IMG/VR virus record: IMGVR_UViG_3300037882_001770
Coordinates: 186,001 to 250,000 of that record
Direction: 5' to 3' (one strand)
DNA: 64,000 nt
Program-made: the position numbers and the translations under genes
In this document: one piece after another, positions 13,372 through 62,773 of the stretch
Layout of the letters: each line of letters begins with the position of its first letter
Position numbering within the stretch: the stretch's first letter is position 1
Notes under the pieces: model-generated
Databases searched by the model: none
What the model was told of the DNA's origin: nothing
Seen by the model: only the letters and a program-made list of their open reading frames with translations

Positions 13372-14949
13372 TCAACGCTGTTTAGGCCTACCGTAGGCTT
13401 TTTCGTTGTATTTAGGCTCTTTTTTGTTTTTGTCAATTCCGCCGGTTCTGGCAGTGAGCCCTGAATCAGCTGGCATATAATCAACTAATTCGCCAGCTTG
13501 ACTTGCACCAGGTGCATCAGTAGTAGAACTTTGTTCAACGTTGGGTATTACCTTAGGTTCTTTGTTAATGTTGAACACTAACTTACCACTTGAACTTGAT
13601 GTTGAACTATAACTTTTTTGTGCTTCCAGCGTAACTTCCGTAAACAACTTACTTGGCCAAACAGTGGTAAAACCTTGGATAATAAACTCTCCTTTACTTT
13701 TTTTAGCTTCGGTATACATCTGAACAAATGCAGAGTTATTTAAAATATCAGCGGCAGCTTCTGAAAAGTTAGTTTTCATATTAATTTCATTGCATACTTT
13801 ATAAGCAATACTTGATACTAAATGATTGAGTGGGATAACTTTATTTTCATCATCGGCTACACGGTCTTTGTAAATTTGTTTTAAGTTTTTAGTCAAGTTG
13901 GTATTGTCAATATTAAAATTTTTGTCGCCGTCGTATGATTTTAAGGTCATGACTTGTTCTGATTCAGCTGGAGTTATTAGCTTAAGATCTACAGCCAACT
14001 CTAATGGAGCTGAATCGTGAGTTCCTTTGTCGATCACCTCAAGAATTCTAATAGGTTCTGGATACAGTTCACGGAACTGTGTTATGCCAGCCGCTTCTAG
14101 CTCACGCACACTCTTAATAAGATTGGTACTGGATGCCATGGCACCCTTGGCACCTTTACTTGATAGTTTGATTTGTTTACCTTGAGGATTAATCAATAAA
14201 CTATCGTAAAGTTCGCCACTGGTTTTTTCATTGAAACTTATGATACAATCACTATAGGTTCCGCCCATGAATACTTCTGCGGCTTTGCTGGCATTACCTT
14301 TTACTGGTTGACCATTGATCAATATGATAGGCTGTAACATTTCGCAAAAGTAGTCACGAAACCCAGCAAAATCCATGTTGCCCGATGGAACGCTTACTGG
14401 GAAACTAGCGGCACTGGTTATGATCACAGCGGCATTGTACTCATCTGAGTTTGCACCAAATTTAGTTTGAATTTGTGCAAGAATACTTTCAGGCGTTTGA
14501 CTTTTGAATTCTTTTAAAACCTGACTGGGTTTGTAGCCAACCTTTTCTTTTGATCCACGGGCATCGGCTTGACTGAATCCACCCGGAATATCGTCAGTTT
14601 GAAAAAATTTATTTGAATCGTGAACAGGTTTAATATTTTGTGCAAATTTGGCCAAATATCGTGTACCTACAGCAGTGTCAAACGTAGCAATACCAAATGC
14701 CCGATTGCTGTTACTAGGTTGATTGATCTGCTCAATCGGATGACCTAGTTTTTTTTGTACTTGATCAAATGCTGCTTGGGTTTCTTCTTTGCTAGCATAT
14801 TGCCCAACTTGGGGATAAAATGTTAAACTTTGGAAGACAATTTGATCGTCGGGGTTATCACCACGCTTATAAACAGCACCTGGCACACGACCGCTGAGTC
14901 CACGGCTTTCGTTTAGTATAGTATCGAGTAGATTTAGAATGTCACGCAT
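13372..14949 (-). CDS. hypothetical late protein, possible internal virion protein
   Basis: 525-aa ORF; TAAGTA late promoter at about 14976-14981 (minus); leader MRDILNLLDTILNE. Confidence 0.7.
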   Translation of the reverse strand: MRDILNLLDTILNESRGLSGRVPGAVYKRGDNPDDQIVFQSLTFYPQVGQYASKEETQAAFDQVQKKLGHPIEQINQPSNSNRAFGIATFDTAVGTRYLAKFAQNIKPVHDSNKFFQTDDIPGGFSQADARGSKEKVGYKPSQVLKEFKSQTPESILAQIQTKFGANSDEYNAAVIITSAASFPVSVPSGNMDFAGFRDYFCEMLQPIILINGQPVKGNASKAAEVFMGGTYSDCIISFNEKTSGELYDSLLINPQGKQIKLSSKGAKGAMASSTNLIKSVRELEAAGITQFRELYPEPIRILEVIDKGTHDSAPLELAVDLKLITPAESEQVMTLKSYDGDKNFNIDNTNLTKNLKQIYKDRVADDENKVIPLNHLVSSIAYKVCNEINMKTNFSEAAADILNNSAFVQMYTEAKKSKGEFIIQGFTTVWPSKLFTEVTLEAQKSYSSTSSSSGKLVFNINKEPKVIPNVEQSSTTDAPGASQAGELVDYMPADSGLTARTGGIDKNKKEPKYNEKAYGRPKQR

Positions 14950-15000: not shown

Positions 15001-15597
15001 ATGCCAAATTTAGTACCCATTGTAGTAGAACAAACCAGCAAAGGCGAACGCAGTTACGATATATATAGTAGACTGCTGCGTGATCGTATTGTAATGCTAG
15101 ATACAGACGTAAACGAGCATACTGCCAGTTTGATAGTGGCTCAGTTGCTGTTTTTAGAAGCAGAAGATCCAGAGCGCGATATTATTTTTTACATCAACAG
15201 CCCAGGTGGCGTAGTCACGGCAGGTATGGCAATTTACGACACTATGAACTTTATTCGCCCGGATGTAAGCACAGTGGTCATGGGCCAGGCATGTAGCATG
15301 GGAAGTTGTTTAGCTCAGGCTGGCGCCGCAGGTAAACGATTTATTTTGCCAAATGCACGTCATATGATTCACCAACCTTCGGGCGGTGCCAGAGGACAAG
15401 CAACAGATATTCAGATTCAAGCACAAGAAATACTCAAAATGAAAAAATACTTAACAGAGATCTATGTCAAGCACAACACTGCTGGCAAAACCTTTGAGCA
15501 GTTGACCGCAGACATGGAACGCGACAACTTTATGAGTGCTGAAGAAGCAGTGGCCTATGGCTTGGCTGATCAGATTATAACTCGACGCGATGCCTAA
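15001..15597 (+). CDS. clpP: ATP-dependent Clp protease proteolytic subunit
   Basis: [46 protein letters not shown]. Confidence 0.97.
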
Positions 15598-16897
15598 TCA
15601 GCAGGTATTTTGCAACACCCCGTGGTATGAATTACATATCTATTGGGACGGTGGCTTTGGTATTTGTTGTCAAGAAAGCCACCGATTGTATAAAGATTCC
15701 ACACAGTACAACATTGCCAACATGAGCATTATGGAATGGTTTAATAGCCAACCTGTGCGAAAATTCAGAACAGACATACTGGGTGACAGTAAAATATCTG
15801 AGTGCCAGCGTTGTTATATTGAAGAACGACACGGCGGCAACAGTCGTAGATTAAAAAGTAATTTAAAAAGCGTTATCTTTACACGTCAGGCCTTTGATGA
15901 AAGTTTTAAACAAAGTCCAGGATATCCGATATTTTCAACCAACGACCAAACTCAAGGCTACACCACGACCCATCCGATTGATCTGCATGTTGACCTAGGA
16001 AACTACTGTAACTTGGCCTGTAAAATGTGCCATGCACAGGCCAGTAGCACAATTGCAAGCCAAGAAGTAAAATGGGGCATTGCCGAAAGCAAACAGTATC
16101 TTGGTACCGACTGGACCAGAAATCCGCAGGTATGGCAATCGTTTAAACAGCAGTTGTTGGAAATACCAAATTTAAAGAATATACACTTCATGGGCGGCGA
16201 AACTCTACTGACCAATCAATTTGAAGATCTAGTGGACTGGTTGACCGAACATCGACGATTTGAAGTGTGTTTTAGTTTTGTGACCAATGGTACAGTGTTT
16301 AAACCAACACTAATCGACAAACTTAAAAAGTTTCAGCGAGTGGGCATAGAAATCAGTATAGAATCTGTAGATGAACACAATGCTTATCAACGTCAGGGCA
16401 CCGATACTGCTCTGGTACTAGCCAACATCAAACAATATCAAACACACTGCAACAACACCAGCATCACCGTGGCATTACGTCCAGCACCTAGCGCATTGAC
16501 CATTGGCTACTATGTGGGATTATTGCAGTTTGCACTAGACAATCAGTTGGTGGTCAAAAGCAATCTGTGTTACGAGCCAAGATTCTTAAATGCAGAAATA
16601 TTACCTGACAAAACAAAATTGCTTTACCAGTCATATTATCAAGAATTTTTAACACAATTTGCCGATGTACAGGCCAATATCGATTACAATGCCAGCGACT
16701 TGAATAACTATCGATTAATCATCAAAGAACATGCAGAAATGTGCCTGGCCATATTGCAAACCCCGGAGCCCAACGATTATCAACATCAAATTGAATGTCT
16801 GGTCAATCACTGTAGAAAATGGGATGATATTTACGGATACGATGCACGAGTATTATATCCTGAATTAACTGAAATATTGGATCTTTATGGCTATTGA
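15590..16897 (+). CDS. radical SAM protein with N-terminal SPASM/Twitch-like domain
   Basis: [16 protein letters not shown]; N-terminal C..PW...CC...C..C. Confidence 0.9.
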
Positions 16898-32992: not shown

Positions 32993-33200
32993 GTTTCTAT
33001 ATCATTGCACAATACCCTGGATTGATCAAACCAATCCTATGTATTATTGGGACACATTGTGTGCCAATGCTATAGAATTATTTGGACTTCCGGGAGATAG
33101 GTACATAACCGATATAAGCGAGCACTCAATGACCTGGAGTTTTTGCAACCAACATGACGCATTACTTTTTAAATTAAAATTTGGGGAAACATGTCAGTAA
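32952..33200 (+). CDS. small protein, F-x-F-xxx-D-A-xx-F-x-L-x-W family (start may be TTG 32979)
   Basis: W...CA.AIE.FGLPG.RY...WSFCNQHDALLFKLKF. Confidence 0.65.
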   Translation: MMITYGNTTLREPKFLYHCTIPWIDQTNPMYYWDTLCANAIELFGLPGDRYITDISEHSMTWSFCNQHDALLFKLKFGETCQ

Positions 33201-33823
33201 ACGACGAAATCATTCGTGTAACTCCAATACCAGAATATTTCAACATCACATGGATGCTAGGATCTAGATGCAACTACGATTGTATGTATTGTCCGGCCGA
33301 ATTGCACGATGCTACAAGTCGGCCACACGATTTAGAAACCATGCAAAAGGCGTGGATAAACATACACTCTAAAACAACTAATAAAAACTTGCCTTACAAA
33401 ATTAGTTTCACTGGCGGTGAAGTAACTGCCAATAAAAACTTTTTATCATTGGTTGGGTGGTTAAAATCCAACTACTCTGAAATTGGAATGATATTAACGA
33501 CCACTAACGGCAGCGCCAGTAAACGTTATTACGAACAGTTGAGTCAATCAATTGATTCGATCAGCTTTAGCACTCACAGTGAGTTTATGAACGAAGCAGA
33601 ATTTTTTGACAAGGTGTTGGCAACAGATCGGTTGATGCTACGTCCAGAAAAAAGTGTTCATGTTAACATCATGGACGAATATTGGAATCAGTCACGCATA
33701 CAAATATACAAAGAATTCTTAGAAAAACACAGTATCAGTTATAGCATAAACACAATCGATTACACTAGTAAAATTAGAGAAAACATTTTGAATAACGGAG
33801 TACAAAATCTTGTCGTCACTTGA
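33191..33823 (+). CDS. radical SAM protein (core domain only)
   Basis: CNYDCMYC, FTGGEVT, TNGS, SFSTHSE. Confidence 0.9.
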   Translation: MSVNDEIIRVTPIPEYFNITWMLGSRCNYDCMYCPAELHDATSRPHDLETMQKAWINIHSKTTNKNLPYKISFTGGEVTANKNFLSLVGWLKSNYSEIGMILTTTNGSASKRYYEQLSQSIDSISFSTHSEFMNEAEFFDKVLATDRLMLRPEKSVHVNIMDEYWNQSRIQIYKEFLEKHSISYSINTIDYTSKIRENILNNGVQNLVVT

Positions 33824-41549: not shown

Positions 41550-42374
41550 ATGCCAGAAAAAACCTACAGATCAATTTTTATTTCGGATGTACATCTCGGT
41601 ACCCGTGACTGCAAGGCCGAAGCTCTCAACAACTTTCTCAAACACAACACCTGCGAAACCCTGTATCTTGTAGGAGACATAATTGACGCATGGAAAATAC
41701 AACAGAACAAGTGGCGATGGAAACAAAGCCACACCAATGTGATACGCAGAGTAATGGGTCATGCCAAACGTGGCACTCGAGTAATTTATGTGGCCGGCAA
41801 CCACGATGAATTTCTAAGACCCTTGATACCTTTGGGCATTGGCTTTGGCCTGATCGAAGTGGTAAATCAAGCAGAACACATAGGCGTGGATGGCCGACAC
41901 TATCTGGTCACACATGGTGATCTGTTCGACGGTATTACTAGACTGGCACCGTGGCTAGCATTTCTGGGTGACAAACTTTATGATTTTGTATTAAACTTAA
42001 ATTCACAGTTCAATGCTGTTCGTCGTAGGTTGCGCTTGGGTTATTGGAGTCTAAGCCGGTATCTCAAATACAAAGTCAAAAAAGCCGCCGATTTTTTGTT
42101 TCAGTTTGAACGTAATCTTGCTACCTACTGCAAGAAGCGTGGCTACGATGGTGTTATTTGTGGGCACATACATCATGCAGAAATCAAAGAGATAGATGGA
42201 ATCATGTACATGAATGACGGAGACTGGGTTGAGAGTATGACCGCCTTGGTTGAACATCATTCAGGAACATGGGAAATCATAACCTGGACCAAGGAGCACG
42301 ACGATGTGGATACTGATACTGTTGGCCGTGAACATAAACAATCCAAACGACGTACCCGGAAGAGTAAGCATTGA
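41550..42374 (+). CDS. LpxH/PlcP-like metallophosphoesterase
   Basis: FISDVHLG, YLVGDIID.W, GNHDE, HGD.FD, ICGHIH, Y.NDGDWVES.TALVE. Confidence 0.9.
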   Translation: MPEKTYRSIFISDVHLGTRDCKAEALNNFLKHNTCETLYLVGDIIDAWKIQQNKWRWKQSHTNVIRRVMGHAKRGTRVIYVAGNHDEFLRPLIPLGIGFGLIEVVNQAEHIGVDGRHYLVTHGDLFDGITRLAPWLAFLGDKLYDFVLNLNSQFNAVRRRLRLGYWSLSRYLKYKVKKAADFLFQFERNLATYCKKRGYDGVICGHIHHAEIKEIDGIMYMNDGDWVESMTALVEHHSGTWEIITWTKEHDDVDTDTVGREHKQSKRRTRKSKH

Positions 42375-49251: not shown

Positions 49252-49470
49252 TTGAGTAAAGAAGACGTCATTAAGATGGAAGGTATTATATCAGAAGTTC
49301 TGCGCAATACCACATACCGAGTTCAAATCGAAAACTTTGAAAAAACTGTACTTGCTACGTTAAATGGCCGTATGCGACAGAACAATATCAAAGTACTAGC
49401 CGGAGACGTAGTCGAGCTAGAATTTAGCCCGTACGATTTAACTCGCGGCAGAATTACAAGAAGGCGCTAA
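49252..49470 (+). CDS. infA: translation initiation factor IF-1
   Basis: KEDVI.MEG.I.E.L.N...RV; G.MR.N.I.VL.GD.V..E.SPYDLTRGRI..R. Confidence 0.95.
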   Translation: MSKEDVIKMEGIISEVLRNTTYRVQIENFEKTVLATLNGRMRQNNIKVLAGDVVELEFSPYDLTRGRITRRR

Positions 49471-50604
49471 ATGAGTTCTTGGTATTGTGCTTTACCTTTT
49501 AAACATGTGTTTGTGGACAGTACAGGACTTAGTCCTTGTTGCAATACCGTCGGACAATTTGGGCTTGACGTCAGTATAGACGAATACAAATCACATCCTA
49601 AGTTACTAGAATTACAAAAACAATTTCTTGATGGGCGCACTCCTGCTGCATGCTCTGTTTGCTTGCACCAAGAAAAAATTCAAAACAAAAGTATGAGAAT
49701 AGACAGTAATATTGACTACAATCATCGGGTGTTTGATTCTACCGAGTTTGATTTTATACACCTTAGTCAAAGTAACTTGTGTAATTTCAAATGCCGCAGT
49801 TGTAGTCCAAGATACAGCCACGGAATAGTTCAAGAACACAAAAAATATCCCGAATTGTTTGCGGACGCACCTCAACAAAAATTCGTCGAAGTCAATCCTG
49901 ACAATTATAAATGGATTATTAAAAATTTATCAAGTATTAAAAGACTTTTAATAACCGGCGGAGAGCCCACAGTAATGCCAGAAATAAGACATTTGTTTGA
50001 ATTTTTGTTGCAAACACCGCGGCCGCAACCACAACCGTATATTATGATGACAACCAATTGTAGCTGGACTGATAATTTTTGGTATCAAGCAATTGACGGT
50101 ATGTCTAATTTGCATATCACAGCTAGTGTAGATGCAGTAGGAGATGCTGCGCAACTAATAAGACACGGTACTGTTTGGAATCAGGTAGAGCGCAACGTGA
50201 AGTGGTTAGCCCAGCATGCCTCGAGTTTTGATATCAATACGGTAATTAGCAATTTAAATATAAACCATCTTTATGATTTACTTCAATTCTGCAGACAAGA
50301 ACAAATAGCCTCCAAAGTAGAAAATGGAGGGAAACAGGGAGATTTGGGACTACGGCATCAATTTACTATAGCTAACGGTGTCAATGAGATTACCTGTTTT
50401 CCGGATGATCTAAAAACAAAAACACTAAAACATTTGGATCAGTGCCTTGCATTGGATCTAGATCCAGACCAACTGAAATTGATCAAGGGGTTAATTGTAA
50501 CTGTTCAAAATAGTACATACAATCATCAAAAATGGCAAAGTATTGTAGAATATCAAACCAAACTTGATCAAATTCGTGGTGAAAACCATTTGAAACTACT
50601 CTAA
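49471..50604 (+). CDS. radical SAM protein with N-terminal Twitch-like domain
   Basis: C.LPF..PCC..C..C; CNFKCRSC; TGGEP; TN. Confidence 0.9.
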   Translation: MSSWYCALPFKHVFVDSTGLSPCCNTVGQFGLDVSIDEYKSHPKLLELQKQFLDGRTPAACSVCLHQEKIQNKSMRIDSNIDYNHRVFDSTEFDFIHLSQSNLCNFKCRSCSPRYSHGIVQEHKKYPELFADAPQQKFVEVNPDNYKWIIKNLSSIKRLLITGGEPTVMPEIRHLFEFLLQTPRPQPQPYIMMTTNCSWTDNFWYQAIDGMSNLHITASVDAVGDAAQLIRHGTVWNQVERNVKWLAQHASSFDINTVISNLNINHLYDLLQFCRQEQIASKVENGGKQGDLGLRHQFTIANGVNEITCFPDDLKTKTLKHLDQCLALDLDPDQLKLIKGLIVTVQNSTYNHQKWQSIVEYQTKLDQIRGENHLKLL

Positions 50605-50615
50605 TAAATATTATC

Positions 50616-51158
50616 ATGCGCAAACATATCGATCTTGTAGAAGCAACTACCCGCCCGGCTAAGTTGGAAACTACTCCGTTGCCGTATGGTGAACAGGACC
50701 TAGAACCAGTGATGAGCCAAGCAACCATTGGCTATCACTACGAGCACCTGGCTAAGGGCTATGCCAAACGCTACAATGCCGGTGAAGGCAATGCTGATTT
50801 TAACCGTGCTGGATCATTTTTACATAATAAATTTTTTCCGCAACTAAAAGAACCCAAAGGTGCAAACCGCCCAAAAGGTGCTGTATTAGAACTTATAGAA
50901 ACAAACTTCAAAACGTACGAAGACTTTAAAGCAGAATTTAAAAAGGTGGCCATGTCTGTGCAAGGGTCCGGATGGGTATATCTCTCTACATCGGGCACTA
51001 TCAAAACCATCCCAAATCATCAGGTTAGAACGGATATCTGTGTTCTTGTTGACTGGTGGGAACACGCTTGGGCACTAGATTATCAATGGGACAAAGAGAA
51101 ATATCTAGATAATATTTGGAAAATAATCAACTGGGACGTGTGTAACGAAAGAATATGA
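50616..51158 (+). CDS. sod: Fe/Mn superoxide dismutase
   Basis: LPY....LEP; YHY; FLHN; GSGWVYL; DWWEHA; INW. Confidence 0.88.
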
Positions 51159-51481
51159 TAACTATAAGCGAAACTGCAATAGCAAAACTGCAAGATATTT
51201 TAATCGAGGAAAACAATCCCGATCTTAAATTACGTGTATTTGTTCAAGGTGGTGGCTGTAGCGGAATGAGCTATGGTTTTACCCTGGACGAAGTTCAAAA
51301 TGAAGACGATTGGGATCTGGAAATTTCCGGTGTAAAAGTCCTAGTAGATTCAATGAGTGGTGGCTATTTACAGGGTGCCGAAGTGGATTACAAAGAGGAC
51401 AATTACGGCAGTAGCTTTACCATCAAAAATCCAAACGCACAAACAACCTGCGGTTGCGGCAGCAGTTTTAGTCCCACCTAG
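51155..51481 (+). CDS. erpA: A-type Fe-S carrier ErpA/IscA
   Basis: [16 protein letters not shown]; VDSMS..YL.GA.VDY; [12 protein letters not shown]. Confidence 0.93.
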
Positions 51482-51545: not shown

Positions 51546-54296
51546 ATGGCTCAACAATTTATTAATGTAGGCGCATCACCCAATGATGGGCAAGGCGATC
51601 CTATACGAACAAGTTTTATCAAATGTAACAACAACTTTGACCAACTGTATAGTCGAGCTCAAACAGCACCTCCTGCTACCCTAGTAGGAACTCCGGGCGA
51701 TGAAGCCGGAATGTACGCATACGACGTAGACTTTTTCTACTATTGTTTTCAAAATTACGACGGTAGTTCAGTTATTTGGAATCAAGTGCAACAGGCCGGT
51801 AATGTCAATGCTTCAACATTGACAAACGGCGACAGTAATGTAAGAATTGCCCTGCCAGATGGTCCTGTCACTGTTTCTGTAAATGCTGTCAGCAACATAG
51901 CAGTGTTTACCACTACAGATTTAACCTTAACTGTTGATGTGAGTGCCACGGGCAATATTACCGGTGGAAATCTATTAGGCGATACTGATATTGTTGCAGT
52001 GGGTAATGTATATGGTGGCAACTTGCTGGCAAATGCCAACATTGTTGCCACTGCAAATGTTTCGGCCAACAATTTGATAGCATTGGCCAATGTATCGGCT
52101 GTGGGCATCAGTGCCTCTGGTAATGTAACAGGTGGCAACATTCTTACTGTTGGACGCATAAGCGCTACCGGCAACGTCAACGGAAATTATATTTTAGGCA
52201 ATGGTGCCTTGTTGACTGGCATTGTGACCACTGTTGACAATGTTACAAACGGAACCAGTAATGTTCGAATCAGTTCAGCCAATGCCAATGTCACAGTTGG
52301 AGTAAATGGCACAGCTAACGTAGCAGTATTTTCTACTTCAGGATTAACAGTTACGGGCATTTCATCATCCACCGGAAATGTAATCGGTGGCAACATTACC
52401 ACAGCAGGTCAAGTTGTTGCCACAGGCAACATCACTGGCGGAAACATATCAACTGCTGGCGGAATAAGTTCGACTGGAAATATTTTAACAGCCGGCAACA
52501 TTTCTGCTACTGGCAATATTACCACAAGCGGAGTGTTTGTTGGAACATTCTTTGGCAACGTAACCGGTAACTTTGTGGTACCCGGTGCCAATACTCAAAT
52601 TATTTTCAACACCAATGGTAATGCTGATGCAGTTGCAGGCCTGACATACAATGCAATATCAAATGTGTTGACTGTGCTAGGAGTAGTAAGCGCCACTGGC
52701 AACGTGTTGGGTGGCAATTTACTAACCACAGGATTAATCAGTGCCACTGGTAACATACAAGCCGGCAATTTAAGAACCACTGGCGTGATGACTGCCACAG
52801 GAAACATTGTGGGTGGAAATCTTTTAACCACCTTGGTTGAAGCCACTACAGTCAGTGCCACTGGTAACATACAAGCCGCCAATTTAAGAACAACCGGATC
52901 AGTCAGTGCCACCGGCAACGTAGCTGGCGGAAATTTAATTGCTGCAGGCATTACTACAGCAGTAGGCAACATCAATTCAGGCGCCAATATTATAGCGGCA
53001 GCCAATGTAATTGGTGGTAATATCTCCACAGCCGGACAATTATCGGCCGCAGGAAATATTACTGGCGCAAACGTTACTACCGGTGGTAGAGTACTAGCAA
53101 CCGGTAACGTAACAGGTGGCAACATTACTACCGGCGGAGATGTTGACGCATTGGGTGATGTTAGCGGACTAACAGTTACAGCTTCGGCAAATATTACTGG
53201 TGGTAATTTACGAACAGCAGGTGTTGCCAATATAGCCACCTTATTAGTAACAGGAAATACCACATTCACAGGCAATGTGGCCAACATCAATGTCACTGGC
53301 AACGTAACAGGTGGCAATTTTGTTACTCCGGGATTAGGATCATTTGGCACTGTGGTAACTGCAACTGGCAACGTGATCGGCGGCAACGTTACCACAGCTG
53401 GCCAGGTCGTTGCCACAGCCAATATAACAGGTGGTAACATCACCACTGCTGGTAGAGTACTAGCCACAGGCAACGTAACAGGTGGTAACATCACCACTGG
53501 TGGCCTAGTTGTAGCCCTTGGCGACATTACCGGCGGTAACTTAAGAACCACCGGATTAGTTAGCGCCACCGGCAATATCACCGGTAACAACGCAACCATT
53601 ACCAACACACTTACAACAGCTGCCCTCAGTGTAACTGGCAACGTTGCCAATAATCTAGCAGTAACTGGTAACGTGTCCGGAGGCAATCTTAGAACAGCTG
53701 GTCAAGTAAGTGCCACTGGCAATATTACTACAAATGGATTGTTTGTTGGAAACTTTACAGGAAATATTACTACTACTAGTATTATAATTCCAGGAACTCT
53801 TACACTCAACAGTGGAAATTCAGCCACGGCAATTATCAATGGTGGCGGCAATGCTGTGGGCAATATTGGTTCAAGTTCAAACTATTTCAACACTGTATTT
53901 GCCAAAGCAACTTCGGCACAGTACGCCGACTTGGCAGAACTTTACCTAGCCGACACAGAGTATGCGCCTGGAACAGTGGTGTCGTTCGGCGGCGCCCAAG
54001 AAATTACGCTCAGCACAGCAGATCACGACGTGACAGTAGCTGGTATTGTGAGTACCAATCCTAGCTACCTAATGAATTCTGGACTGTCGGGAGAACACGT
54101 GGTTGCAGTAGCATTAACTGGTCGCGTTCCCTGTCAGGTACAGGGGCCAGTACGCCCGGGTGCAATGATGGTCAGTGCCGGAAACGGCCGTGCCAGGGCC
54201 GAAGTTAACCCCGCAATGGGCACTGTAATAGGTAAGGCCTTGCAATCATTCGATGGCGAGGTTGGAATAATTGAAATTGTAGTTGGAAGACTTTAA
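51546..54296 (+). CDS. tail fibre protein with GN repeats and C-terminal chaperone/peptidase-like domain
   Basis: INVGASPNDGQGDPIRTSF.K.N.NF; many VSATGN(I/V)TGGN(L/I) repeats; AQYADLAE.Y...G.VST.P..LMN...AL.GRVP. Confidence 0.88.
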   Translation: MAQQFINVGASPNDGQGDPIRTSFIKCNNNFDQLYSRAQTAPPATLVGTPGDEAGMYAYDVDFFYYCFQNYDGSSVIWNQVQQAGNVNASTLTNGDSNVRIALPDGPVTVSVNAVSNIAVFTTTDLTLTVDVSATGNITGGNLLGDTDIVAVGNVYGGNLLANANIVATANVSANNLIALANVSAVGISASGNVTGGNILTVGRISATGNVNGNYILGNGALLTGIVTTVDNVTNGTSNVRISSANANVTVGVNGTANVAVFSTSGLTVTGISSSTGNVIGGNITTAGQVVATGNITGGNISTAGGISSTGNILTAGNISATGNITTSGVFVGTFFGNVTGNFVVPGANTQIIFNTNGNADAVAGLTYNAISNVLTVLGVVSATGNVLGGNLLTTGLISATGNIQAGNLRTTGVMTATGNIVGGNLLTTLVEATTVSATGNIQAANLRTTGSVSATGNVAGGNLIAAGITTAVGNINSGANIIAAANVIGGNISTAGQLSAAGNITGANVTTGGRVLATGNVTGGNITTGGDVDALGDVSGLTVTASANITGGNLRTAGVANIATLLVTGNTTFTGNVANINVTGNVTGGNFVTPGLGSFGTVVTATGNVIGGNVTTAGQVVATANITGGNITTAGRVLATGNVTGGNITTGGLVVALGDITGGNLRTTGLVSATGNITGNNATITNTLTTAALSVTGNVANNLAVTGNVSGGNLRTAGQVSATGNITTNGLFVGNFTGNITTTSIIIPGTLTLNSGNSATAIINGGGNAVGNIGSSSNYFNTVFAKATSAQYADLAELYLADTEYAPGTVVSFGGAQEITLSTADHDVTVAGIVSTNPSYLMNSGLSGEHVVAVALTGRVPCQVQGPVRPGAMMVSAGNGRARAEVNPAMGTVIGKALQSFDGEVGIIEIVVGRL

Positions 54297-54299
54297 AAT

Positions 54300-57089
54300 A
54301 TGGCACAACCTGTTTGGGTAACTCCGGCTGGTAGCTTAGGCACTATTCCCGAAGGGGTCTTTTATCAAATACCCTTAGAGGCCTATGAACCAGAATTAAT
54401 TCTAACAGTTACCTCTCTGGTGGCCACTGGATCTAGTGTTACTTTAAACTTTGCAACACAAGCAACAATTCCGTTTTTGGTAGGCACAACTATAACAGTA
54501 GCCGGATTTATACCCAACACTTACAACTCGATCTACACAGTAACAGGCGCAACTACCAGCTCGGTTACCTTTGCAAGTACTGTAACTGATTCAGTTACCA
54601 ATTATGGCACAGTGCGTGTGGGAGTACAATTTCAAATTATTGCTGGGTCCTTGCCGCCCGGAATACAAGTTGAAGCCACCGGAGTGATTGAAGGCATTCC
54701 GTCGGCGACAATTGAGATACAAGGTGTTCCGGCCAACGTAAGCAGAGATGTCACTAGCAAATTTGCCATACGAGCCTACACAGAAACCATAGTTAACGGC
54801 ATACGAGTTATTAACCGGCTAGCGGATCGAACATTTACACTAACAGTCACTGGTCAAGACGCTCCTGAATTTATTACACCCCCCGGAAACATTGGAATCT
54901 TTTATGATGGCGCCCAAATTGAGCCAATACAGATAGAATATACTGACACAGATCCAACGGACATAGTTGTTATTAGACTGTCAGCTGGACAATTGCCACC
55001 TGGATTAACGCTAAGTGCGTCTGGACTTATCTCGGGCTACACCATTCCTAATTCGCCTATTGATGCCACGGCCGGATACAGTAGAGACGGGCAAGGATTT
55101 GATGAATACCCGTTTGATTTTTCAACTCAAAGTATCGACACAACATATGAGTTTGTGTTAGAAGTAACCGACGGAAAAAACAGTGACCTGCGGGCCTTTA
55201 CAATCCAGGTGTATTCTCGAGATTCGTTAGACGCTTCAACCACAGATATAACTGCTGACAATACCTTTATCACAGCCGATGCTAGCCCAACTCGTGTGCC
55301 GTTTATTACTACTCCACAGGGCAGTATTGGCACTGTAAGAAATGACAACTTCTTTGCTTTCCAATTCCAAGGACTAGACTTTGACGGCGATCGATTCGAC
55401 TTTGCTGCATTGACTACCTTGCCACCTGGGCTAACCTTAGACCCTGTATCGGGTTGGTTATACGGATACATACCCGACTTGGGCCAGACCGAAAATGTAT
55501 ATAATTTTTCACTACGTGTATTCAAGGTAGACAATCCATTGGTGTTCAGTGAAAACTACAACTATTCATTATCTATAATTGGCACAGTTGATACCACAGT
55601 TACTTGGTTGGTCCCAGGTGACCTGGGATCAATCAACAACGGTGATACTAGTACCTTGTATGTCGCAGCTGAAAATGCCGCTGGCATACCATTATTGTAT
55701 CGACTACAATCAGGTAGCGACAGTAGCTTGCCACAAGGACTGACCTTATTGCCCAGTGGCGATATTGCTGGACGAGTAAGTTTTAACACTTTTGCGTTGG
55801 ACAAAGGAGCGACCACATTTGATGTGGCGTCGCGCACCGGCGCAACAACATTTGACCTTACCTACATCTTTGTGGTCAATGCCTACAGTACCAATGGATT
55901 GGTCAGTGTATTTAAAACCTTTACTATACATCTGGTTCGTGAATATAACGAGCCCTATGAAAATCTGTATATCCAAGCCATGCCACCGCTCAATGATCGA
56001 GCAATAATTAACTCGTTGTTGTCAAACTCTAACATATTCCCAGAAGACCTGTTGTATAGACCAACTGATCCAAATTTTGGATTGGCTGACAGTGTGATTT
56101 ATCAACATGCTTTTGGTCTAACCAGTGCAACTATTGCCGACTATGTGTCAAGTTTGTATCTCAACCACTATTGGAAAAATTTAATACTGGGAAATATTCA
56201 AACAGCGCAGGCGTTAGATGATGATGGAAATGTTTTATATGAAGTGGTGTACAGCAAAATCATCGATAATTTAGTTAATGCGCAAGATCAAAGTGTCAGC
56301 AAAGAAGTCACCTTACCTTACCCTATAGCGTTTCCGGACTCGGCTGAATTGTCTACAGTGTATCCAAACAGTCTAGACAACATGCGAGACCAAGTGATTG
56401 ATACTGTAGGACAAATTAGCAATATTTTACCACGTTGGATGTTGAGCAAACAAGCCAACGGACAAGTGTTGGGATTTACGCCTGCTTGGGTAATTGCCTA
56501 CACCAATCCTGGAAAGAGCGGGCAGATTGCCTACAATATAGAAACACAGTTTACACAACCGTTAAATTTGATAGATTTTAAAGTGGATCGTTACGAGTTA
56601 GATCGTGCTCTAAGTATCAATTGGGATCCGTTGGCTGACAGCAGCCAAGGAGCATGGGAGCCATATCCAACCCTGACTACATTTGACATTAATCCGCATT
56701 ATCAATTGATGTCACAACCAACTGTTGGTGGAACTGGATATGCTGTTGGAGACATAATTGCAATATCCGGCGGTGACCTGTTAGGCGTTCCTGGAGCAAA
56801 TGATGCGTTTTTTACTGTGTCGCAGGTTAGTGATGTTGGTGCAATTGAAATAGTGTTTTGTTCGGGCACAGCCGAGCTGTTCACTGAAGGTGCAGTGTTT
56901 ATTGATTATTTTGGAACAAATATCATTGGATCTGGCAGTGGCGCAACATTCAGCATTGAAACAGTAGCCGGAGTACAAACCGAGTTTGATGGTGGCAGCC
57001 TACGATTTATTAGTCCTGTAGATATGTACACTACCGGTAACGAATACGATAAATATCTCGTATTCCCCAAACGGAACATTTTAGAATAA
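54300..57089 (+). CDS. baseplate wedge-like protein with Ig-like (LPPGL) domains
   Basis: repeated W.TP.GSLG and G.LPPGL.L...G.I.G; LPRWM...Q; F..DRY; DKY..FP. Confidence 0.75.
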   Translation: MAQPVWVTPAGSLGTIPEGVFYQIPLEAYEPELILTVTSLVATGSSVTLNFATQATIPFLVGTTITVAGFIPNTYNSIYTVTGATTSSVTFASTVTDSVTNYGTVRVGVQFQIIAGSLPPGIQVEATGVIEGIPSATIEIQGVPANVSRDVTSKFAIRAYTETIVNGIRVINRLADRTFTLTVTGQDAPEFITPPGNIGIFYDGAQIEPIQIEYTDTDPTDIVVIRLSAGQLPPGLTLSASGLISGYTIPNSPIDATAGYSRDGQGFDEYPFDFSTQSIDTTYEFVLEVTDGKNSDLRAFTIQVYSRDSLDASTTDITADNTFITADASPTRVPFITTPQGSIGTVRNDNFFAFQFQGLDFDGDRFDFAALTTLPPGLTLDPVSGWLYGYIPDLGQTENVYNFSLRVFKVDNPLVFSENYNYSLSIIGTVDTTVTWLVPGDLGSINNGDTSTLYVAAENAAGIPLLYRLQSGSDSSLPQGLTLLPSGDIAGRVSFNTFALDKGATTFDVASRTGATTFDLTYIFVVNAYSTNGLVSVFKTFTIHLVREYNEPYENLYIQAMPPLNDRAIINSLLSNSNIFPEDLLYRPTDPNFGLADSVIYQHAFGLTSATIADYVSSLYLNHYWKNLILGNIQTAQALDDDGNVLYEVVYSKIIDNLVNAQDQSVSKEVTLPYPIAFPDSAELSTVYPNSLDNMRDQVIDTVGQISNILPRWMLSKQANGQVLGFTPAWVIAYTNPGKSGQIAYNIETQFTQPLNLIDFKVDRYELDRALSINWDPLADSSQGAWEPYPTLTTFDINPHYQLMSQPTVGGTGYAVGDIIAISGGDLLGVPGANDAFFTVSQVSDVGAIEIVFCSGTAELFTEGAVFIDYFGTNIIGSGSGATFSIETVAGVQTEFDGGSLRFISPVDMYTTGNEYDKYLVFPKRNILE

Positions 57090-60663: not shown

Positions 60664-61580
60664 AAGAACTTTGGGTAGAAAAATATAGACCTAATACTAT
60701 AGACGGTTACGTATTTCGCGACACCGCTCAGCGGGAACAAATTGAAAGCTGGATCAAGGATCGAGCAATTCCACATTTGATATTCAGTGGCAATGCTGGC
60801 ATTGGAAAAACAACACTGGCTAAGATTTTGATCAATCAGCTCGAAATAAACGAATATGATCTATTGGAAATCAATGCCAGTCGAACCAACAGTGTTGACG
60901 ATGTTAGAGTAAAGATTCAGACCTTTGTAGAAACAATGCCCTTTGGCGACTTCAAAATTGTGTTGTTAGACGAAGCAGATTATCTAAGCCCTAATGCTCA
61001 AGCCGCACTTCGAGGAGTTATGGAAACCTATGCGCATACAGCCAGATTTATTTTAACCTGTAACTACCCAACCAAGATTATTCCGGCACTACACAGTCGC
61101 TGTCAGGGCTTTCACATTGAACGTGTTGACATGACTGAATTTACTGCTCGAGCAGCTACAGTGCTGGTTGAAGAATCAATTGAATTTGACCTAGATACCC
61201 TAGATACCTATGTCAAGGCTGCTTATCCAGACCTGCGCAAATGTTTAAATACCTTGCAAATGAATAGTTCGTCGGGTAAACTGTTGGTCCCCAGTGGCGA
61301 TGCCGGCAGTACAGGCGACTGGAAACTGTCGGCAGTTGAATTGTTTAAAGAAGGGCGGATCAATGACGCTCGCAAACTGATGTGTAGTCAAGCTCGGCCC
61401 GAGGAAATGGAAGATGTATTCCGTTGGATGTACGACAACTTGTCGTTATGGAGCAAGGACACCGAAAAGCAAGATCAAGCAATTATTATCATTCGTAACG
61501 GCTTGGTGAATGTGCCAATGGTGGCGGATCAGGAGATCAATCTATCAGCAACTATCACGGAACTTTGCCAGTTGCAATGA
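60660..61580 (+). CDS. sliding clamp loader subunit (RFC/gp44-like AAA+)
   Basis: LWVEKYRP, GNAGIGKTT, INAS, LLDEAD, SRC, DLRK. Confidence 0.95.
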   Translation: MKELWVEKYRPNTIDGYVFRDTAQREQIESWIKDRAIPHLIFSGNAGIGKTTLAKILINQLEINEYDLLEINASRTNSVDDVRVKIQTFVETMPFGDFKIVLLDEADYLSPNAQAALRGVMETYAHTARFILTCNYPTKIIPALHSRCQGFHIERVDMTEFTARAATVLVEESIEFDLDTLDTYVKAAYPDLRKCLNTLQMNSSSGKLLVPSGDAGSTGDWKLSAVELFKEGRINDARKLMCSQARPEEMEDVFRWMYDNLSLWSKDTEKQDQAIIIIRNGLVNVPMVADQEINLSATITELCQLQ

Positions 61581-62773
61581 AAAAGGTAATACCGATACAG
61601 ACAGATCGTGATTATTATTGTTCAAATAAATTTACTTTTTTAAAAATTGATTTTGAAAAACAAACCACGTATAATTGTCATGCAGCCACACCCCATCCAA
61701 TTGATTTTGTCTGGTTAGAAAATAATCCTGGGCAATTGTTTAATACGCCAATCAACATGTCTGAACGTGAGTTGATGTTGGATAATCAACGTAACCCTAG
61801 TTGTGAACAAAACTGCTATCCAGCCGAAGATCGTGGCCAGGTCAGTACTCGAATGTTACAGTCTACTCCGGATCGTCAATACACTGATGTTCTAACTCAC
61901 CCCAAGCTGGTGGACTTTACACTGTTTAGTGAATGCAACCTTACCTGTAGTTATTGTTGCAAAGAATACAGCAGTGCCTGGCGCAATGACTTGTTAAAAA
62001 ACGGATCGTATGATCTGCCAAATTACGCCAATCAAAATCGCATGAAATTGTTGCCTATAGATATTGTGTCTGGTAAGGTAAGTCAAAAAGAAAAAGCAAA
62101 TTTGCCTAAGATAAAATTGCTATTGGAGCAAGTTTACAACAGTCGAGAACATCTTGAAATTTTAACCATCACCGGCGGGGAGCCATTTCTAAACAATCTG
62201 CTACCAGAGATATTAGAAAAATTTAAAACAGTTCCTAGAATTGATTTGTTTACTGGTCTTGGAGTTAACACCGAACGATTTAAAAAAATATTATCTGTGG
62301 TATCACAATACAAAAATATCAACTTGTGCATCAGTGCCGAATCTACAGAAAAAAATTACGAGTTTAACCGCTACGGCATGACTTGGCAAAATTTTCAAGA
62401 ACGATTAAAAATTATTCAAGATCTTGGAATCAAATTTGAATTCCACTGCACTATCTCTAATCTTACAGTGTTAGGGTTCAAGGACTTTTATAAACTCTAC
62501 AAAGATGTCAAACTACATATAGACTTTGTGCATCACCCCGATTTTATGTCAGCCAGCAACTTAGATCCTGCATCCAAACAACAAGTCATAGATGATTTAT
62601 TGCCATATCAAGACGATGTAAAAATCCAACAGATATTACAAACCGTAATCAGCGATCATGTAAATAACGATCATAGGGTAACTATGGCCACGTGGCTAGA
62701 GCAGTTTGCTAGTCGTCGACAACTTGATTTAAATTTATACCCAAAAACTTTTTTAGATTGGCTAAAACAATGA
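61577..62773 (+). CDS. radical SAM protein with N-terminal Cys cluster
   Basis: C..KF...CH...SCEQNC; CNLTCSYC; TGGEP. Confidence 0.9.
   Translation: MKKVIPIQTDRDYYCSNKFTFLKIDFEKQTTYNCHAATPHPIDFVWLENNPGQLFNTPINMSERELMLDNQRNPSCEQNCYPAEDRGQVSTRMLQSTPDRQYTDVLTHPKLVDFTLFSECNLTCSYCCKEYSSAWRNDLLKNGSYDLPNYANQNRMKLLPIDIVSGKVSQKEKANLPKIKLLLEQVYNSREHLEILTITGGEPFLNNLLPEILEKFKTVPRIDLFTGLGVNTERFKKILSVVSQYKNINLCISAESTEKNYEFNRYGMTWQNFQERLKIIQDLGIKFEFHCTISNLTVLGFKDFYKLYKDVKLHIDFVHHPDFMSASNLDPASKQQVIDDLLPYQDDVKIQQILQTVISDHVNNDHRVTMATWLEQFASRRQLDLNLYPKTFLDWLKQ

What the first reader, a model, noticed from the sequence alone, without database searches (positions are those of the whole stretch)
50605..51158. SOD with a possible capsid-targeting leader and paired active-site substitutions
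Seen: TAAATA lies just before the ATG; the extension [10 protein letters not shown] resembles the leader of the 13372..14949 protein. By manual alignment to E. coli MnSOD the four metal ligands and Tyr34 are kept, but His30 is Leu and Tyr174 is Ala. Known: His30 and Tyr174 hydrogen-bond across the dimer interface. Inference: a virion-packaged, possibly altered SOD protecting DNA or the newly infected cell.
Basis: partly seen in the sequence, partly recalled or inferred. Interest (0 to 1): 0.6.

Follow-up and report, generated by a model that had tools for sequence, protein, structure and literature searches.

The report
Jumbo-phage SOD with capsid-targeting-like leader
A 317-kb environmental jumbo phage encodes a compact, probably active iron/manganese superoxide dismutase that belongs to a virus-only clade with a changed active-site surround and carries a conserved N-terminal leader that looks like the signal T4-type phages use to load proteins into the capsid, though packaging is not yet shown.

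Summary
ORF 50616..51158 (180 aa) is a Fe/Mn-type SOD. All four metal ligands, Tyr34 and Glu170 are kept; His30 is Leu and Tyr174 is Ala. This is a clade trait, not a local accident. In 69 unique homologues from about 320-350-kb phage contigs, plus PA5oct-like Pseudomonas phages and a Vibrio jumbo phage, Leu30 is invariant, position 174 is Ala/Ser/Met/Val, no Gln occupies either canonical site, and His135 is invariant. All 19 cellular SODs checked keep His30, Tyr174 and a Gln.

The leader is also conserved: every homologue keeps hydrophobic-x-Glu before the SOD core. The genome encodes a T4 gp21-type prohead protease. Its scaffold protein is 11-fold enriched in this motif, and the capsid protein and the 13372..14949 (minus-strand) protein carry similar N-terminal sites. 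TAAATA lies 5 nt before the ATG in most homologous loci, and a gp55-type late sigma factor is encoded.

The PA5oct homologue is flagged as detected by MS in CsCl-purified virions, but so are RNR and thymidylate synthase. A rival reading is strong: SOD overlaps an ErpA Fe-S carrier gene in most loci, and the phage has 13 radical-SAM ORFs. Packaging is plausible (about 0.5) but unproven.

The parts
50603..50610 (+). T4-late-promoter-like element AATAAATA (TAAATA at 50605-50610), ending 5 nt before the ATG, with no Shine-Dalgarno sequence between them
   Evidence: Sequence. TAAATA lies 3-9 nt before the ATG of 30 ORFs of the genome, including portal and virion proteins, against about 0.8 expected. 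It is conserved in 62 of 69 homologous loci. A gp55-type late sigma factor is encoded at G000 64.3-65.1 kb.
50616..51158 (+). Fe/Mn-type superoxide dismutase precursor, 180 aa, with a shortened alpha-hairpin
   Evidence: Pfam; PDB sequence matches; AF2 model with pLDDT 92.4; Foldseek TM about 0.8 to B. fragilis SodFM2, A. pernix and E. coli SODs; predicted canonical homodimer with ipSAE 0.77 against a best control of 0.01.
50616..50642 (+). Leader codons 1-9 (MRKHIDLVE), a putative capsid-targeting propeptide with an inferred cleavage site after Glu9 (L7-V8-E9 | A10)
   Evidence: Beyond the N-terminus of canonical SODs. Hydrophobic-x-Glu is kept in 69 of 69 unique homologues, where the background probability is about 0.19. 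It is the only [LIVMF]xE[AGS] site in the protein. Predicted as a helix at residues 2-11 with low pLDDT. The T4 precedent is in PMC9026906.
50736..50762 (+). Helix 1 active-site stretch: H41 (ligand, 50736-50738), L45 in place of His30 (50748-50750), Y49 = Tyr34 (50760-50762)
   Evidence: H41, L45 and Y49 are invariant in 69 homologues.
50823..50825 (+). H70, the second His ligand (His81/73). The preceding Fe-type Gln69 position is Ser67, with a one-residue deletion
51018..51074 (+). C-terminal active-site residues: H135 (invariant, at the Mn-type Gln146 position), D146, E149, H150 (ligands and bridging Glu), W152, and A153 in place of Tyr174 (51072-51074)
   Evidence: Residues 134-135, 148-150 and 153-154 lie in the predicted dimer interface.
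51155..51481 (+). ErpA-type A-type Fe-S cluster carrier. Its ATG overlaps the SOD stop codon (ATGA)
   Evidence: NCBIfam ErpA equivalog, 150.8 bits against a cut-off of 117; Pfam Fe-S_biosyn. SOD-IscA adjacency, often with overlap, is conserved in most of about 80 loci.
49471..50604 (+). Twitch-domain radical-SAM protein directly upstream. This is variable cargo and is not conserved at this position
   Evidence: It is one of 13 radical-SAM ORFs in the genome.
49252..49470 (+). IF-1 homologue, the conserved upstream neighbour of the SOD locus
13372..14949 (-). 525-aa protein of unknown function with a strongly conserved CTS-like leader (MRD-hydrophobics-L-x-E | A/S at residue about 14)
   Evidence: The leader is kept in homologues that are only about 24% identical overall. 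No Pfam, PHROG or NCBIfam match.

Best explanation
The gene encodes a compact, dimeric Fe/Mn-family superoxide dismutase of a virus-specific clade. It is made late in infection, from a T4-type late-promoter-like element that sits so close to the ATG that the mRNA would be leaderless or nearly so. The product is a precursor with a short amphipathic N-terminal propeptide.

By analogy with the T4 capsid-targeting sequence, the propeptide takes the enzyme into the prohead core. The phage's gp21-type protease then cuts after Glu9 (L-V-E | A), so that mature SOD (about 171 aa) stays in the capsid and enters the next cell with the DNA.

Its chemistry is ordinary superoxide dismutation at a His3-Asp metal site, but the second sphere is rebuilt: Leu for His30, Ala/Ser for Tyr174 across the dimer interface, and His135 in place of the canonical Gln. 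By the behaviour of engineered MnSOD mutants, this predicts an Fe-preferring or cambialistic enzyme with altered kinetics. The likely physiological purpose is to keep superoxide away from the phage's many Fe-S (radical-SAM) enzymes, together with the co-transcribed ErpA carrier.

Shown: SOD identity, conserved ligands, the clade-wide substitutions, leader conservation, the promoter-like motif, the protease and sigma genes, and the synteny. Inferred: cleavage, packaging, ejection, metal preference, activity, and the transcription start.
For: - SOD fold and ligands.
- Invariance of H41, H70, D146, H150, Y49, E149, L45 and H135 in 69 unique homologues.
- All 19 cellular SODs examined have His30, Tyr174 and a Gln, whereas all phage-type ones lack them.
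- Predicted canonical dimer (ipSAE 0.77, best control 0.01; the mark was reached by 20 of 30 solved homodimers and 1 of 23 proteins solved as single chains; partner pLDDT 91; runs agree), with residues 44-45 and 153-154 in the interface.
- Leader: hydrophobic-x-Glu in 69 of 69 homologues although its length (E at residue 9-17 or later) and sequence vary. PA5oct has ...ISIAE|AAS.
- The gp21-type Peptidase_S77 is encoded.
- The scaffold protein has 14 [LIVMF]xE[AGS] sites in 364 aa, 3.85 per 100 aa against a genome mean of 0.35, the highest of 401 ORFs. The MCP has such sites only at residues 7 and 19. The SOD has only the one at residue 9.
- The same type of leader occurs in the P0001 family, and SOD leaders of distant homologues (L077, L080) resemble it.
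- T4 precedent: the 10-aa CTS is sufficient for packaging foreign proteins, with processing determinants at residues 8 and 10 (PMC9026906).
- The PA5oct homologue EST35_0261 is flagged ESI-MS/MS from CsCl-purified virions, while the scaffold EST35_0153 is not flagged.
- The late-promoter-like motif is shared with portal and virion genes, and a gp55-type sigma factor is present.
- Mutant kinetics and metal-specificity data (H30N, H30V, Y166F, H30N/Y166F non-additive; Q142H gives a cambialistic enzyme; PMC9208312).
Against: - There is no direct evidence of cleavage or of virion location for this phage.
- The PA5oct MS list also contains RNR alpha and beta, thymidylate synthase, GTP cyclohydrolase, QueD, FtsH, ligase, ClpP and MazG. 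Detection is therefore not specific for packaged proteins.
- The three-residue motif is only weakly enriched at N-termini genome-wide: 11 against 5.9 expected in this phage, and 6 of 85 MS-flagged against 6 of 225 unflagged in PA5oct, p = 0.077.
- The Vibrio phage homologue has no leader.
- The TAAATA class also heads radical-SAM and sugar-nucleotide enzymes, so late expression does not imply a virion protein.
- The conserved overlap with ErpA suggests a cytoplasmic partnership.
- A metalloenzyme that is ejected unfolded would have to be re-metallated.
- Human H30V MnSOD is about 300-fold slower, so Leu30 could cripple catalysis.
Confidence: 0.5

Rival explanations
1. A purely intracellular auxiliary enzyme. 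SOD and the overlapping ErpA carrier form a late two-gene unit that protects and re-loads the [4Fe-4S] clusters of the phage's many radical-SAM enzymes in an aerobic host. The N-terminal extension is a structural arm or interaction helix, not a capsid signal, and the PA5oct MS detection is carry-over of an abundant protein.
For: - SOD/IscA adjacency, commonly with stop/start overlap, holds in most of about 80 loci, including distant ones.
- The downstream gene passes the ErpA equivalog cut-off.
- The genome has 13 radical-SAM ORFs and a second A-type carrier.
- Radical-SAM genes share the same TAAATA start arrangement.
- The PA5oct MS list includes obviously non-structural enzymes.
- The Vibrio homologue lacks the leader.
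- In PA5oct and the Vibrio phage the gene lies among proteostasis and translation genes (ClpS, S21, IF-3), not structural genes.
Against: - It does not explain why an extension absent from cellular SODs keeps hydrophobic-x-Glu in 69 of 69 homologues while the rest of the leader drifts.
- It does not explain why distant homologues carry leaders like that of an unrelated protein family.
- It does not explain why the mature part has no other protease-type site.
- A cytoplasmic protective role and packaging are not mutually exclusive.
Confidence: 0.35
2. A SOD-derived metal-binding protein that no longer dismutates superoxide efficiently, for example a metal store or donor working with ErpA, or a decoy. 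The gateway His30, its partner Tyr174 and the second-sphere Gln are all gone.
For: - Three second-sphere residues that were conserved in all 19 cellular SODs are replaced.
- Human H30V is about 300-fold slower, and Q143A/N lose activity.
- The protein scores far below the NCBIfam SodA and SodB equivalog cut-offs: 72 against 348 bits.
- There is a one-residue deletion next to ligand His70 and a shortened hairpin.
Against: - All four ligands, Tyr34, Glu170, Trp128 and Trp169 are invariant across 69 homologues, PA5oct and the Vibrio phage. This is the pattern of a working active site.
- His135 occupies the Gln146 position, and an engineered Gln-to-His MnSOD keeps about 50% activity and becomes cambialistic.
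- H30N/Y166F double mutants keep substantial activity.
- Poxvirus-type decoys lose catalytic function (PMC10583209), unlike this protein with its intact ligand set.
Confidence: 0.1
3. The leader is an annotation artefact and translation really starts downstream.
For: There is no Shine-Dalgarno sequence before the ATG at 50616. An in-frame TTG (Leu17) and an ATG (Met33) exist.
Against: - The conserved SOD N-terminus (L-P-Y at residues 22-24) lies upstream of Met33.
- The amino-acid sequence from residue 5 onward is conserved across loci whose upstream DNA is not.
- The promoter-like motif tracks the ATG at a fixed 5-nt distance even where leader length differs.
- Thirty other ORFs share this SD-less arrangement.
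Confidence: 0.03

Closest known systems
Cambialistic and Fe-type SODs of Bacteroidota and archaea (B. fragilis SodFM2 8avl/8avm, P. gingivalis 1qnn/1ues, A. pernix 3ak1/3ak2, E. coli FeSOD 1isa)
   Same: Same two-domain fold (Foldseek TM 0.79-0.84). Same His3-Asp ligands, Tyr34, bridging Glu and predicted dimer interface. About 25-31% identity.
   Different: About 20 residues are missing from the tip of the alpha-hairpin, and loops in the beta domain are shorter. One residue is deleted before the second His ligand. Leu replaces His30 and Ala/Ser replaces Tyr174. No Gln occupies position 69 or 146; His135 is there instead. There is a 17-residue N-terminal extension. The protein fails the SodA and SodB equivalog cut-offs.
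Uncharacterised SOD-like proteins of Pseudomonas jumbo phages of the PA5oct group (EST35_0261; 'sodB' in MIJ3 and Callisto) and of Vibrio phage 2.275.O (NVP2275O_049)
   Same: Same clade: 39-41% identity, with the same Leu30, non-Tyr174 and His135 signature. The capsid proteins of the phages are 62-66% identical. PA5oct has a comparable leader ending I-A-E | A.
   Different: In PA5oct the gene has a TATAATA-type promoter with a Shine-Dalgarno sequence and sits beside ClpS. The Vibrio protein lacks the leader and has a C-terminal tail. Neither is next to ErpA. None has been studied; no paper was found.
T4 capsid-targeting sequence of internal proteins IPII/IPIII and gp21 processing
   Same: A short N-terminal peptide with a hydrophobic residue at P3 and Glu at P1, followed by a small residue. 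The genome encodes a gp21-family protease, a gp22-like scaffold full of such sites, a Gp23-family capsid protein and a gp55-type sigma factor. The T4 facts are from PMC9026906 and PMC9958956.
   Different: The cargo is a metalloenzyme, not a basic internal protein. There is no sequence homology to the T4 CTS beyond the pattern. Neither targeting nor cleavage has been tested.
Virion-associated Cu,Zn-SODs and SOD-like proteins of eukaryotic large DNA viruses (chlorovirus PBCV-1, Megavirus chilensis, vaccinia A45R)
   Same: The concept is the same: a virus carries or encodes a SOD thought to act on reactive oxygen species early in infection (PMC10583209).
   Different: These belong to an unrelated enzyme family (Cu,Zn beta-barrel), infect eukaryotic hosts and use different packaging routes. 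Some poxvirus homologues are inactive decoys.
Engineered MnSOD second-sphere mutants (human H30N/V/Q, Y166F, H30N/Y166F; C. elegans Q142H, H30N)
   Same: The same three positions are altered. The double mutant is non-additive, showing that His30 and Tyr166 act as a pair. Q142H and H30N shift metal use towards Fe (PMC9208312).
   Different: Here the changes are natural, combined, and fixed across a large clade. The residues are Leu and Ala/Ser rather than Asn and Phe.

Membership tests
Fe/Mn superoxide dismutase (Pfam PF00081 + PF02777) | C-terminal alpha/beta domain | tested here: met
   PF02777: 80.8 bits against a cut-off of 20.9, covering the full profile 1-102.
Fe/Mn superoxide dismutase (Pfam PF00081 + PF02777) | N-terminal two-helix hairpin domain | tested here: inconclusive
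   PF00081: 26.3 bits against a cut-off of 27, covering 45 of 82 positions. The AF2 model has both helices (residues 35-54 and 60-76), but the hairpin is about 20 residues shorter.
Fe/Mn superoxide dismutase (Pfam PF00081 + PF02777) | Metal ligands His26, His81(73), Asp167(156), His171(160) | tested here: met
   H41, H70, D146 and H150 are invariant in 69 homologues, PA5oct and the Vibrio phage.
Fe/Mn superoxide dismutase (Pfam PF00081 + PF02777) | Second-sphere network: Tyr34, His30, Gln69 or Gln146, Tyr174', Glu170' | tested here: not met
   Tyr34 and Glu170 are kept. His30 is Leu, Tyr174 is Ala, and no Gln occupies either site; His135 stands at the 146 position. The ligand set and fold still place it in the superfamily as a divergent subfamily.
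Fe/Mn superoxide dismutase (Pfam PF00081 + PF02777) | Homodimer through the conserved interface | tested here: met
   Prediction only: ipSAE 0.77 against a best control of 0.01. The mark was reached by 20 of 30 solved homodimers and 1 of 23 proteins solved as single chains. Partner pLDDT 91; runs agree. The interface comprises residues 40, 44-45, 116-119, 134-135, 148-150, 153-154 and 157-158. The result may reflect the model's memory of solved SOD dimers.
Fe/Mn superoxide dismutase (Pfam PF00081 + PF02777) | Superoxide dismutase activity and bound Fe or Mn | not testable with these tools
   Needs recombinant protein.
SodB / SodA equivalogs (NCBIfam NF007832, NF008177) | Score above the curated equivalog cut-off | tested here: not met
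   72.5 bits against 348, and 44.1 bits against 363.
T4-type capsid-targeting propeptide processed by a gp21-family protease | Short N-terminal extension beyond the functional domain | tested here: met
   Residues 1-17 precede the first residue aligned to any PDB SOD. The extension is present in all IMG/VR homologues and in PA5oct.
T4-type capsid-targeting propeptide processed by a gp21-family protease | Cleavage determinants: Leu/Ile-type residue at P3 and Glu at P1 | tested here: met
   L7-V8-E9 | A10. [LIVMFC]xE is in the leader of 69 of 69 unique homologues, where the background probability is about 0.19 per 12 positions.
T4-type capsid-targeting propeptide processed by a gp21-family protease | Phage encodes the protease, and its scaffold carries the same sites | tested here: met
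   Peptidase_S77 at 86.9 bits. The scaffold has 14 sites in 364 aa, the top of 401 ORFs.
T4-type capsid-targeting propeptide processed by a gp21-family protease | Protein present in purified virions | tested here: inconclusive
   The only evidence is the GenBank 'ESI-MS/MS' note on the PA5oct homologue. The list also holds metabolic enzymes, and the supplementary table is not held.
T4-type capsid-targeting propeptide processed by a gp21-family protease | Leader removed in the mature protein, and leader sufficient for packaging | not testable with these tools
   Needs N-terminal proteomics and leader-fusion or leader-deletion experiments.
T4-type late promoter (gp55-dependent, TATAAATA) | Motif match upstream of late genes, plus a gp55-type sigma factor in the genome | tested here: met
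   7 of 8 positions match (AATAAATA). The motif is strongly concentrated before ORF starts, including the portal and virion proteins. phrog_12791 at 6e-64 and phrog_234 at 8e-24.
T4-type late promoter (gp55-dependent, TATAAATA) | Mapped transcription start and late timing | not testable with these tools
   No sequencing run was listed.

The most novel reading that the evidence does not exclude
A large, environmentally abundant group of T4-related jumbo phages loads a working Fe/Mn superoxide dismutase into the capsid through a cleavable T4-style targeting peptide and injects it with the DNA. This would be the first virion-borne Fe/Mn SOD of a bacteriophage. The enzyme would be a natural 'triple mutant' (Leu30, Ala174, His at the Gln site) in which the inter-subunit His-Tyr hydrogen bond is replaced by apolar packing, giving altered metal preference and kinetics. 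The gene would also belong to a class of about 30 late genes translated from leaderless mRNAs.
Probability: 0.35. Interest if true: 0.7.

Novelty: new variant of a known kind. Interest (0 to 1): 0.55.

Why it matters
If the leader is a working capsid-targeting signal, T4's cargo-loading mechanism extends to distant jumbo phages and to an antioxidant metalloenzyme. That would give a natural example of an enzyme delivered with the genome to condition the host cell from the first moment of infection. PA5oct is a cultured relative in which this can be tested.

Separately, the clade is a natural experiment on the SOD second sphere. The His30-Tyr174 pair and the Gln, which are treated as near-universal, are all replaced, yet the metal site is under strict conservation. 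Measuring its metal preference and kinetics would test current ideas about proton relay, product inhibition and Fe/Mn selectivity.

The link to ErpA and to 13 radical-SAM genes also suggests that these phages run an oxygen-sensitive Fe-S enzyme programme that needs its own protection.

Tried and rejected
- Megablast of the locus against cultured phages: no match.
- PHROGs: no family for the SOD, for P0001 or for the 170-aa leader-bearing protein g68945.
- tblastn of P0001 and g68945 against cultured phages: nothing.
- The PA5oct supplementary MS table is not held, so peptide coverage of the homologue could not be read. The MIJ3 paper does not mention the SOD.
- Literature searches for phage or jumbo-phage Fe/Mn SODs: nothing specific.
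- Genome-wide test for N-terminal [hydrophobic]x[hydrophobic]xE[AGS]: 11 ORFs against 5.9 expected, which is weak.
- PA5oct test of the motif against MS detection: 6 of 85 against 6 of 225, p = 0.077, suggestive only.
- Public sequencing runs holding the locus: none was listed, so no read evidence on transcript ends.
- Considered and rejected:
  - A secretion signal, because the leader is charged and not hydrophobic.
  - An inactive decoy, because the ligands are invariant.
  - A wrong start codon, because of peptide and promoter conservation.
  - The second L-E in the extension (A-K-L-E | T) as a cleavage site, because it has Lys rather than a hydrophobic residue at P3.
- A GTDB pattern scan found phage-type SODs only on MAG contigs (Haliscomenobacter, Burkholderiaceae, Methylophilaceae). 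At least one has the full phage synteny, so these are taken as binned phage DNA, not cellular genes.
Full report
**What is there.** The window is bases 186001-250000 of a 317,493-bp IMG/VR virus record. ORF 50616..51158 (+) encodes 180 aa. Pfam finds the Fe/Mn-SOD C-terminal domain (8e-23). The N-terminal hairpin domain is found only partly: 26.3 bits against a cut-off of 27, covering 45 of 82 positions. PDB sequence searches match 150+ SODs. The best are B. fragilis SodFM2, P. gingivalis cambialistic SOD and archaeal SODs. In these alignments query residues 18-55 and 58-179 flank a gap of about 20 residues at the tip of the hairpin, and there are smaller deletions in the beta domain. An AlphaFold2 model built on 43 homologues is confident (pLDDT 92.4) and superposes on solved SODs with TM about 0.8. 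The other protein it names, 13372..14949, lies on the minus strand.

**Active site.** The alignments give H41, H70, D146 and H150 as the four ligands, Y49 as Tyr34 and E149 as the bridging Glu170. I collected 80 homologous loci from IMG/VR, which gave 69 unique proteins at 51-89% identity. I added the PA5oct-group and Vibrio 2.275.O proteins at 39-41% identity.
- The ligands, Tyr34, Glu170 and Trp128/169 are invariant.
- Leu at position 30 is invariant.
- Position 174 is Ala (57), Ser (10), Gln or Phe, and Met or Val in the two cultured groups.
- The Fe-type Gln69 position is Ser, Ala or Asn.
- An Asn-His pair (N134-H135) sits where Mn-type enzymes have Asn-Gln, and His135 is invariant.

As a control, all 19 cellular SODs recovered from GTDB genomes have His30, Tyr173-Tyr174 and one of the two Gln types. 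The 'paired substitution' is therefore real and fixed. It is part of a three-position remodelling of the second sphere in a virus-specific subfamily.

A homodimer prediction supports the canonical interface: ipSAE 0.77 against a best control of 0.01. The mark was reached by 20 of 30 solved homodimers and 1 of 23 proteins solved as single chains. Partner pLDDT is 91 and the runs agree. Residues 44-45 and 153-154 lie in the interface, with Ala153 facing Ala153' and Leu45 facing residue 158'. The result may partly reflect the model's memory of solved SOD dimers.

Published mutant data bear on the consequences (PMC9208312):
- Human H30N and Y166F each lower the rate several-fold.
- The double mutant is not additive, so the two residues act as a pair.
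- H30V is about 300-fold slower, through steric blocking of the funnel.
- C. elegans Q142H keeps about half the activity and becomes cambialistic.
- H30N takes up more iron.

By inference, the phage enzyme is likely Fe-preferring or cambialistic with altered kinetics. The small residue at 174 may make room for Leu30. Activity and metal preference remain untested.

**The leader.** Canonical SODs start a few residues before the L-P-Y motif (residues 22-24 here). This protein has 17 extra residues. In the close clade the pattern is a variable stretch of 1-9 residues, then I/L-x-[18 protein letters not shown] before L-P-Y. In distant homologues almost everything changes except a hydrophobic-x-Glu followed mostly by Ala, Gly or Ser. 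Examples are ...F-I-I-E|A...T-I-V-E|G...Y-L-V-E|A, and PA5oct ...S-I-A-E|A. All 69 unique homologues have the motif, against a background chance of about 0.19.

This is the form of the T4 capsid-targeting sequence. The first 10 residues of IPIII suffice to load foreign proteins. Targeting determinants lie at residues 4 and 7 and processing determinants at residues 8 and 10. The gp21 protease cuts after Glu (PMC9026906 and PMC9958956).

The genome has the matching machinery:
- A Peptidase_S77 (gp21-type) protease.
- A Gp23-family capsid protein whose only such sites are L-L-E|G at residues 7 and 19.
- A scaffold protein with 14 [LIVMF]xE[AGS] sites in 364 aa, 11 times the genome mean and the highest of 401 ORFs.

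The SOD has exactly one such site, L-V-E|A at residue 9.

That family keeps an MRD-hydrophobic-L-x-E|A/S leader nearly unchanged in homologues that are only about 24% identical overall. The SOD leaders of two distant homologues (L077, L080) look like it, as if leaders were exchangeable modules. Another ORF outside the window, g68945, starts M-K-T-L-R-E-M-M-D-L-I-E|S.

Against this, the bare motif is only weakly enriched at N-termini genome-wide (11 against 5.9 expected).

**Virion evidence from a cultured relative.** In PA5oct the homologue EST35_0261 carries the GenBank note 'ESI-MS/MS'. The paper and preprint describe CsCl-purified particles and 93 proteins detected, including '7 virion-unrelated enzymes' (PMC7318152 and 10.1101/406421). 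I read the annotation of 250 kb of that genome. The scaffold is not flagged, which speaks for reasonable purity. But RNR alpha and beta, thymidylate synthase, GTP cyclohydrolase, QueD, FtsH, ligase, ClpP and MazG are flagged. Several flagged proteins start with T4-like leaders (M-K-K-V-F-E|A...K-I-T-E|S...I-L-V-E|S, and MCP ...L-F-E|S). The association of the motif with MS detection is only suggestive: 6 of 85 against 6 of 225, one-sided p = 0.077. The supplementary peptide table is not held. This is supportive evidence, not proof.

**Expression signal.** TAAATA (consensus gATAAATAt) is under-represented in the genome. Even so, it lies 3-9 nt before 30 predicted starts, with no Shine-Dalgarno sequence, and 17-26 nt before about 24 more, with a Shine-Dalgarno sequence in between. 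About 1 would be expected by chance in each class. The first class includes the portal and several virion proteins. It also includes radical-SAM and sugar-nucleotide enzymes. The motif sits 5 nt before the SOD ATG here, and 3-9 nt before it in 62 of 69 homologous loci whose flanks are otherwise unrelated. The phage encodes a gp55-type late sigma factor. From my own knowledge of T4, where TATAAATA spans -13 to -6, a 5-nt spacing would put the transcript start on the A of the ATG. That would make the mRNA leaderless. This is inference; no reads were available.

**Context and the main rival.** The SOD stop codon overlaps the start of an ErpA-type A-type Fe-S carrier (ATGA; NCBIfam 150.8 bits against a cut-off of 117). 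The order IF-1, variable cargo, SOD, IscA/ErpA, fibre-like protein is conserved in most loci, and the SOD-carrier overlap is common. The genome has 13 radical-SAM ORFs, 10 of them over the Pfam cut-off, and a second A-type carrier. A plain reading is that SOD plus ErpA protect and refill superoxide-sensitive Fe-S clusters of phage enzymes made late. This role does not need packaging. It is compatible with the leader hypothesis but is also a self-sufficient alternative.

**Distribution.** The nearest cultured phages by capsid protein (62-66% identity) are Sinorhizobium phage Phosso, Vibrio 2.275.O, the PA5oct group and 121Q-like coliphages. The SOD clade is abundant in metagenomes: more than 120 clusters at 82% identity or above, 179-200 aa long. 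In GTDB genomes it occurs only on MAG contigs, and at least one of these (Haliscomenobacter) has the full phage synteny. The next cellular hits are at 34% identity or below. A few records annotate it as sodB or Fe/Mn SOD. I found no paper that discusses it. Virion-borne SODs are known only as Cu,Zn enzymes of eukaryotic large DNA viruses (PMC10583209).

**Verdict.**
- Near 1: a real SOD-family protein of a virus-specific subfamily.
- About 0.8: it is an active enzyme.
- About 0.5: its leader is a protease-processed capsid-targeting peptide and the enzyme travels in the virion.

It is a new variant of known kinds (Fe/Mn SOD and T4-type CTS cargo), and it is directly testable in PA5oct.

Noticed in passing
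Whole genome G000. In the window, for example 41550-42374, 50616 and 51546-54296: TAAATA occurs in two spacing classes before ORF starts: 3-9 nt with no Shine-Dalgarno sequence (30 ORFs) and 17-26 nt with a Shine-Dalgarno sequence in between (about 24 ORFs). With T4 late-promoter geometry, the first class would give leaderless mRNAs. A gp55-type sigma factor is encoded at G000 64.3-65.1 kb.
   Followed up: partly
Window 15590-16897, 33191-33823, 49471-50604 and 61565-62773, plus nine more in G000 outside the window: The 317-kb phage genome has 13 radical-SAM-domain ORFs (10 over the Pfam cut-off). It also has two A-type Fe-S carriers, at window 51155-51481 and G000 153768-154088. What the radical-SAM enzymes modify is unknown.
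   Followed up: partly
Window 12796-13371 (+), 13372-14949 (-) and 15001-15597 (+): The leader-bearing 525-aa protein of unknown function is flanked by two ClpP-like protease genes on the opposite strand. A motif TAAGTATAACA lies 22-26 nt before its ATG and is conserved in relatives.
   Followed up: partly
G000 68945-69457 (outside the window; locus L108): A 170-aa ORF with no family match starts M-K-T-L-R-E-M-M-D-L-I-E|S, a very T4-CTS-like leader, and has TAAATA 7 nt before the ATG. It is a candidate internal head protein.
   Followed up: partly
Window 49252-49470: An IF-1 homologue is the conserved upstream neighbour of the SOD locus in most related contigs. In PA5oct and Vibrio 2.275.O the SOD instead lies near S21, IF-3 and ClpS-like genes. 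In all three groups, therefore, it sits among translation and proteostasis genes.
   Followed up: no
Window 51546-54296 and 54300-57089: Two proteins of about 920 aa lie downstream. The first is built of dozens of short G-N-(I/V)-x-G-G-N-type repeats. Both are fibre-like or virion-structural by weak PHROG matches.
   Followed up: no
L085 and L086 (Haliscomenobacter sp. MAG contigs), L087 (Burkholderiaceae MAG), L088 (Methylophilaceae MAG): Phage-type SOD loci sit in bacterial MAG bins. L085 has the full phage synteny (SleB, p104, p136, IF-1, SOD, IscA, fibre). It is therefore probably phage DNA binned with a bacterium, and possibly a host hint.
   Followed up: partly
L135 (PA5oct 78780-87037) compared with G000 72411-80551: The head modules are collinear: large protein, portal, about 72-aa protein, acidic protein of about 270 aa, protease, scaffold, MCP. 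The MCP N-termini share the two hydrophobic-x-E|G/S sites. The PA5oct scaffold is the only member of the module not detected by MS.
   Followed up: partly
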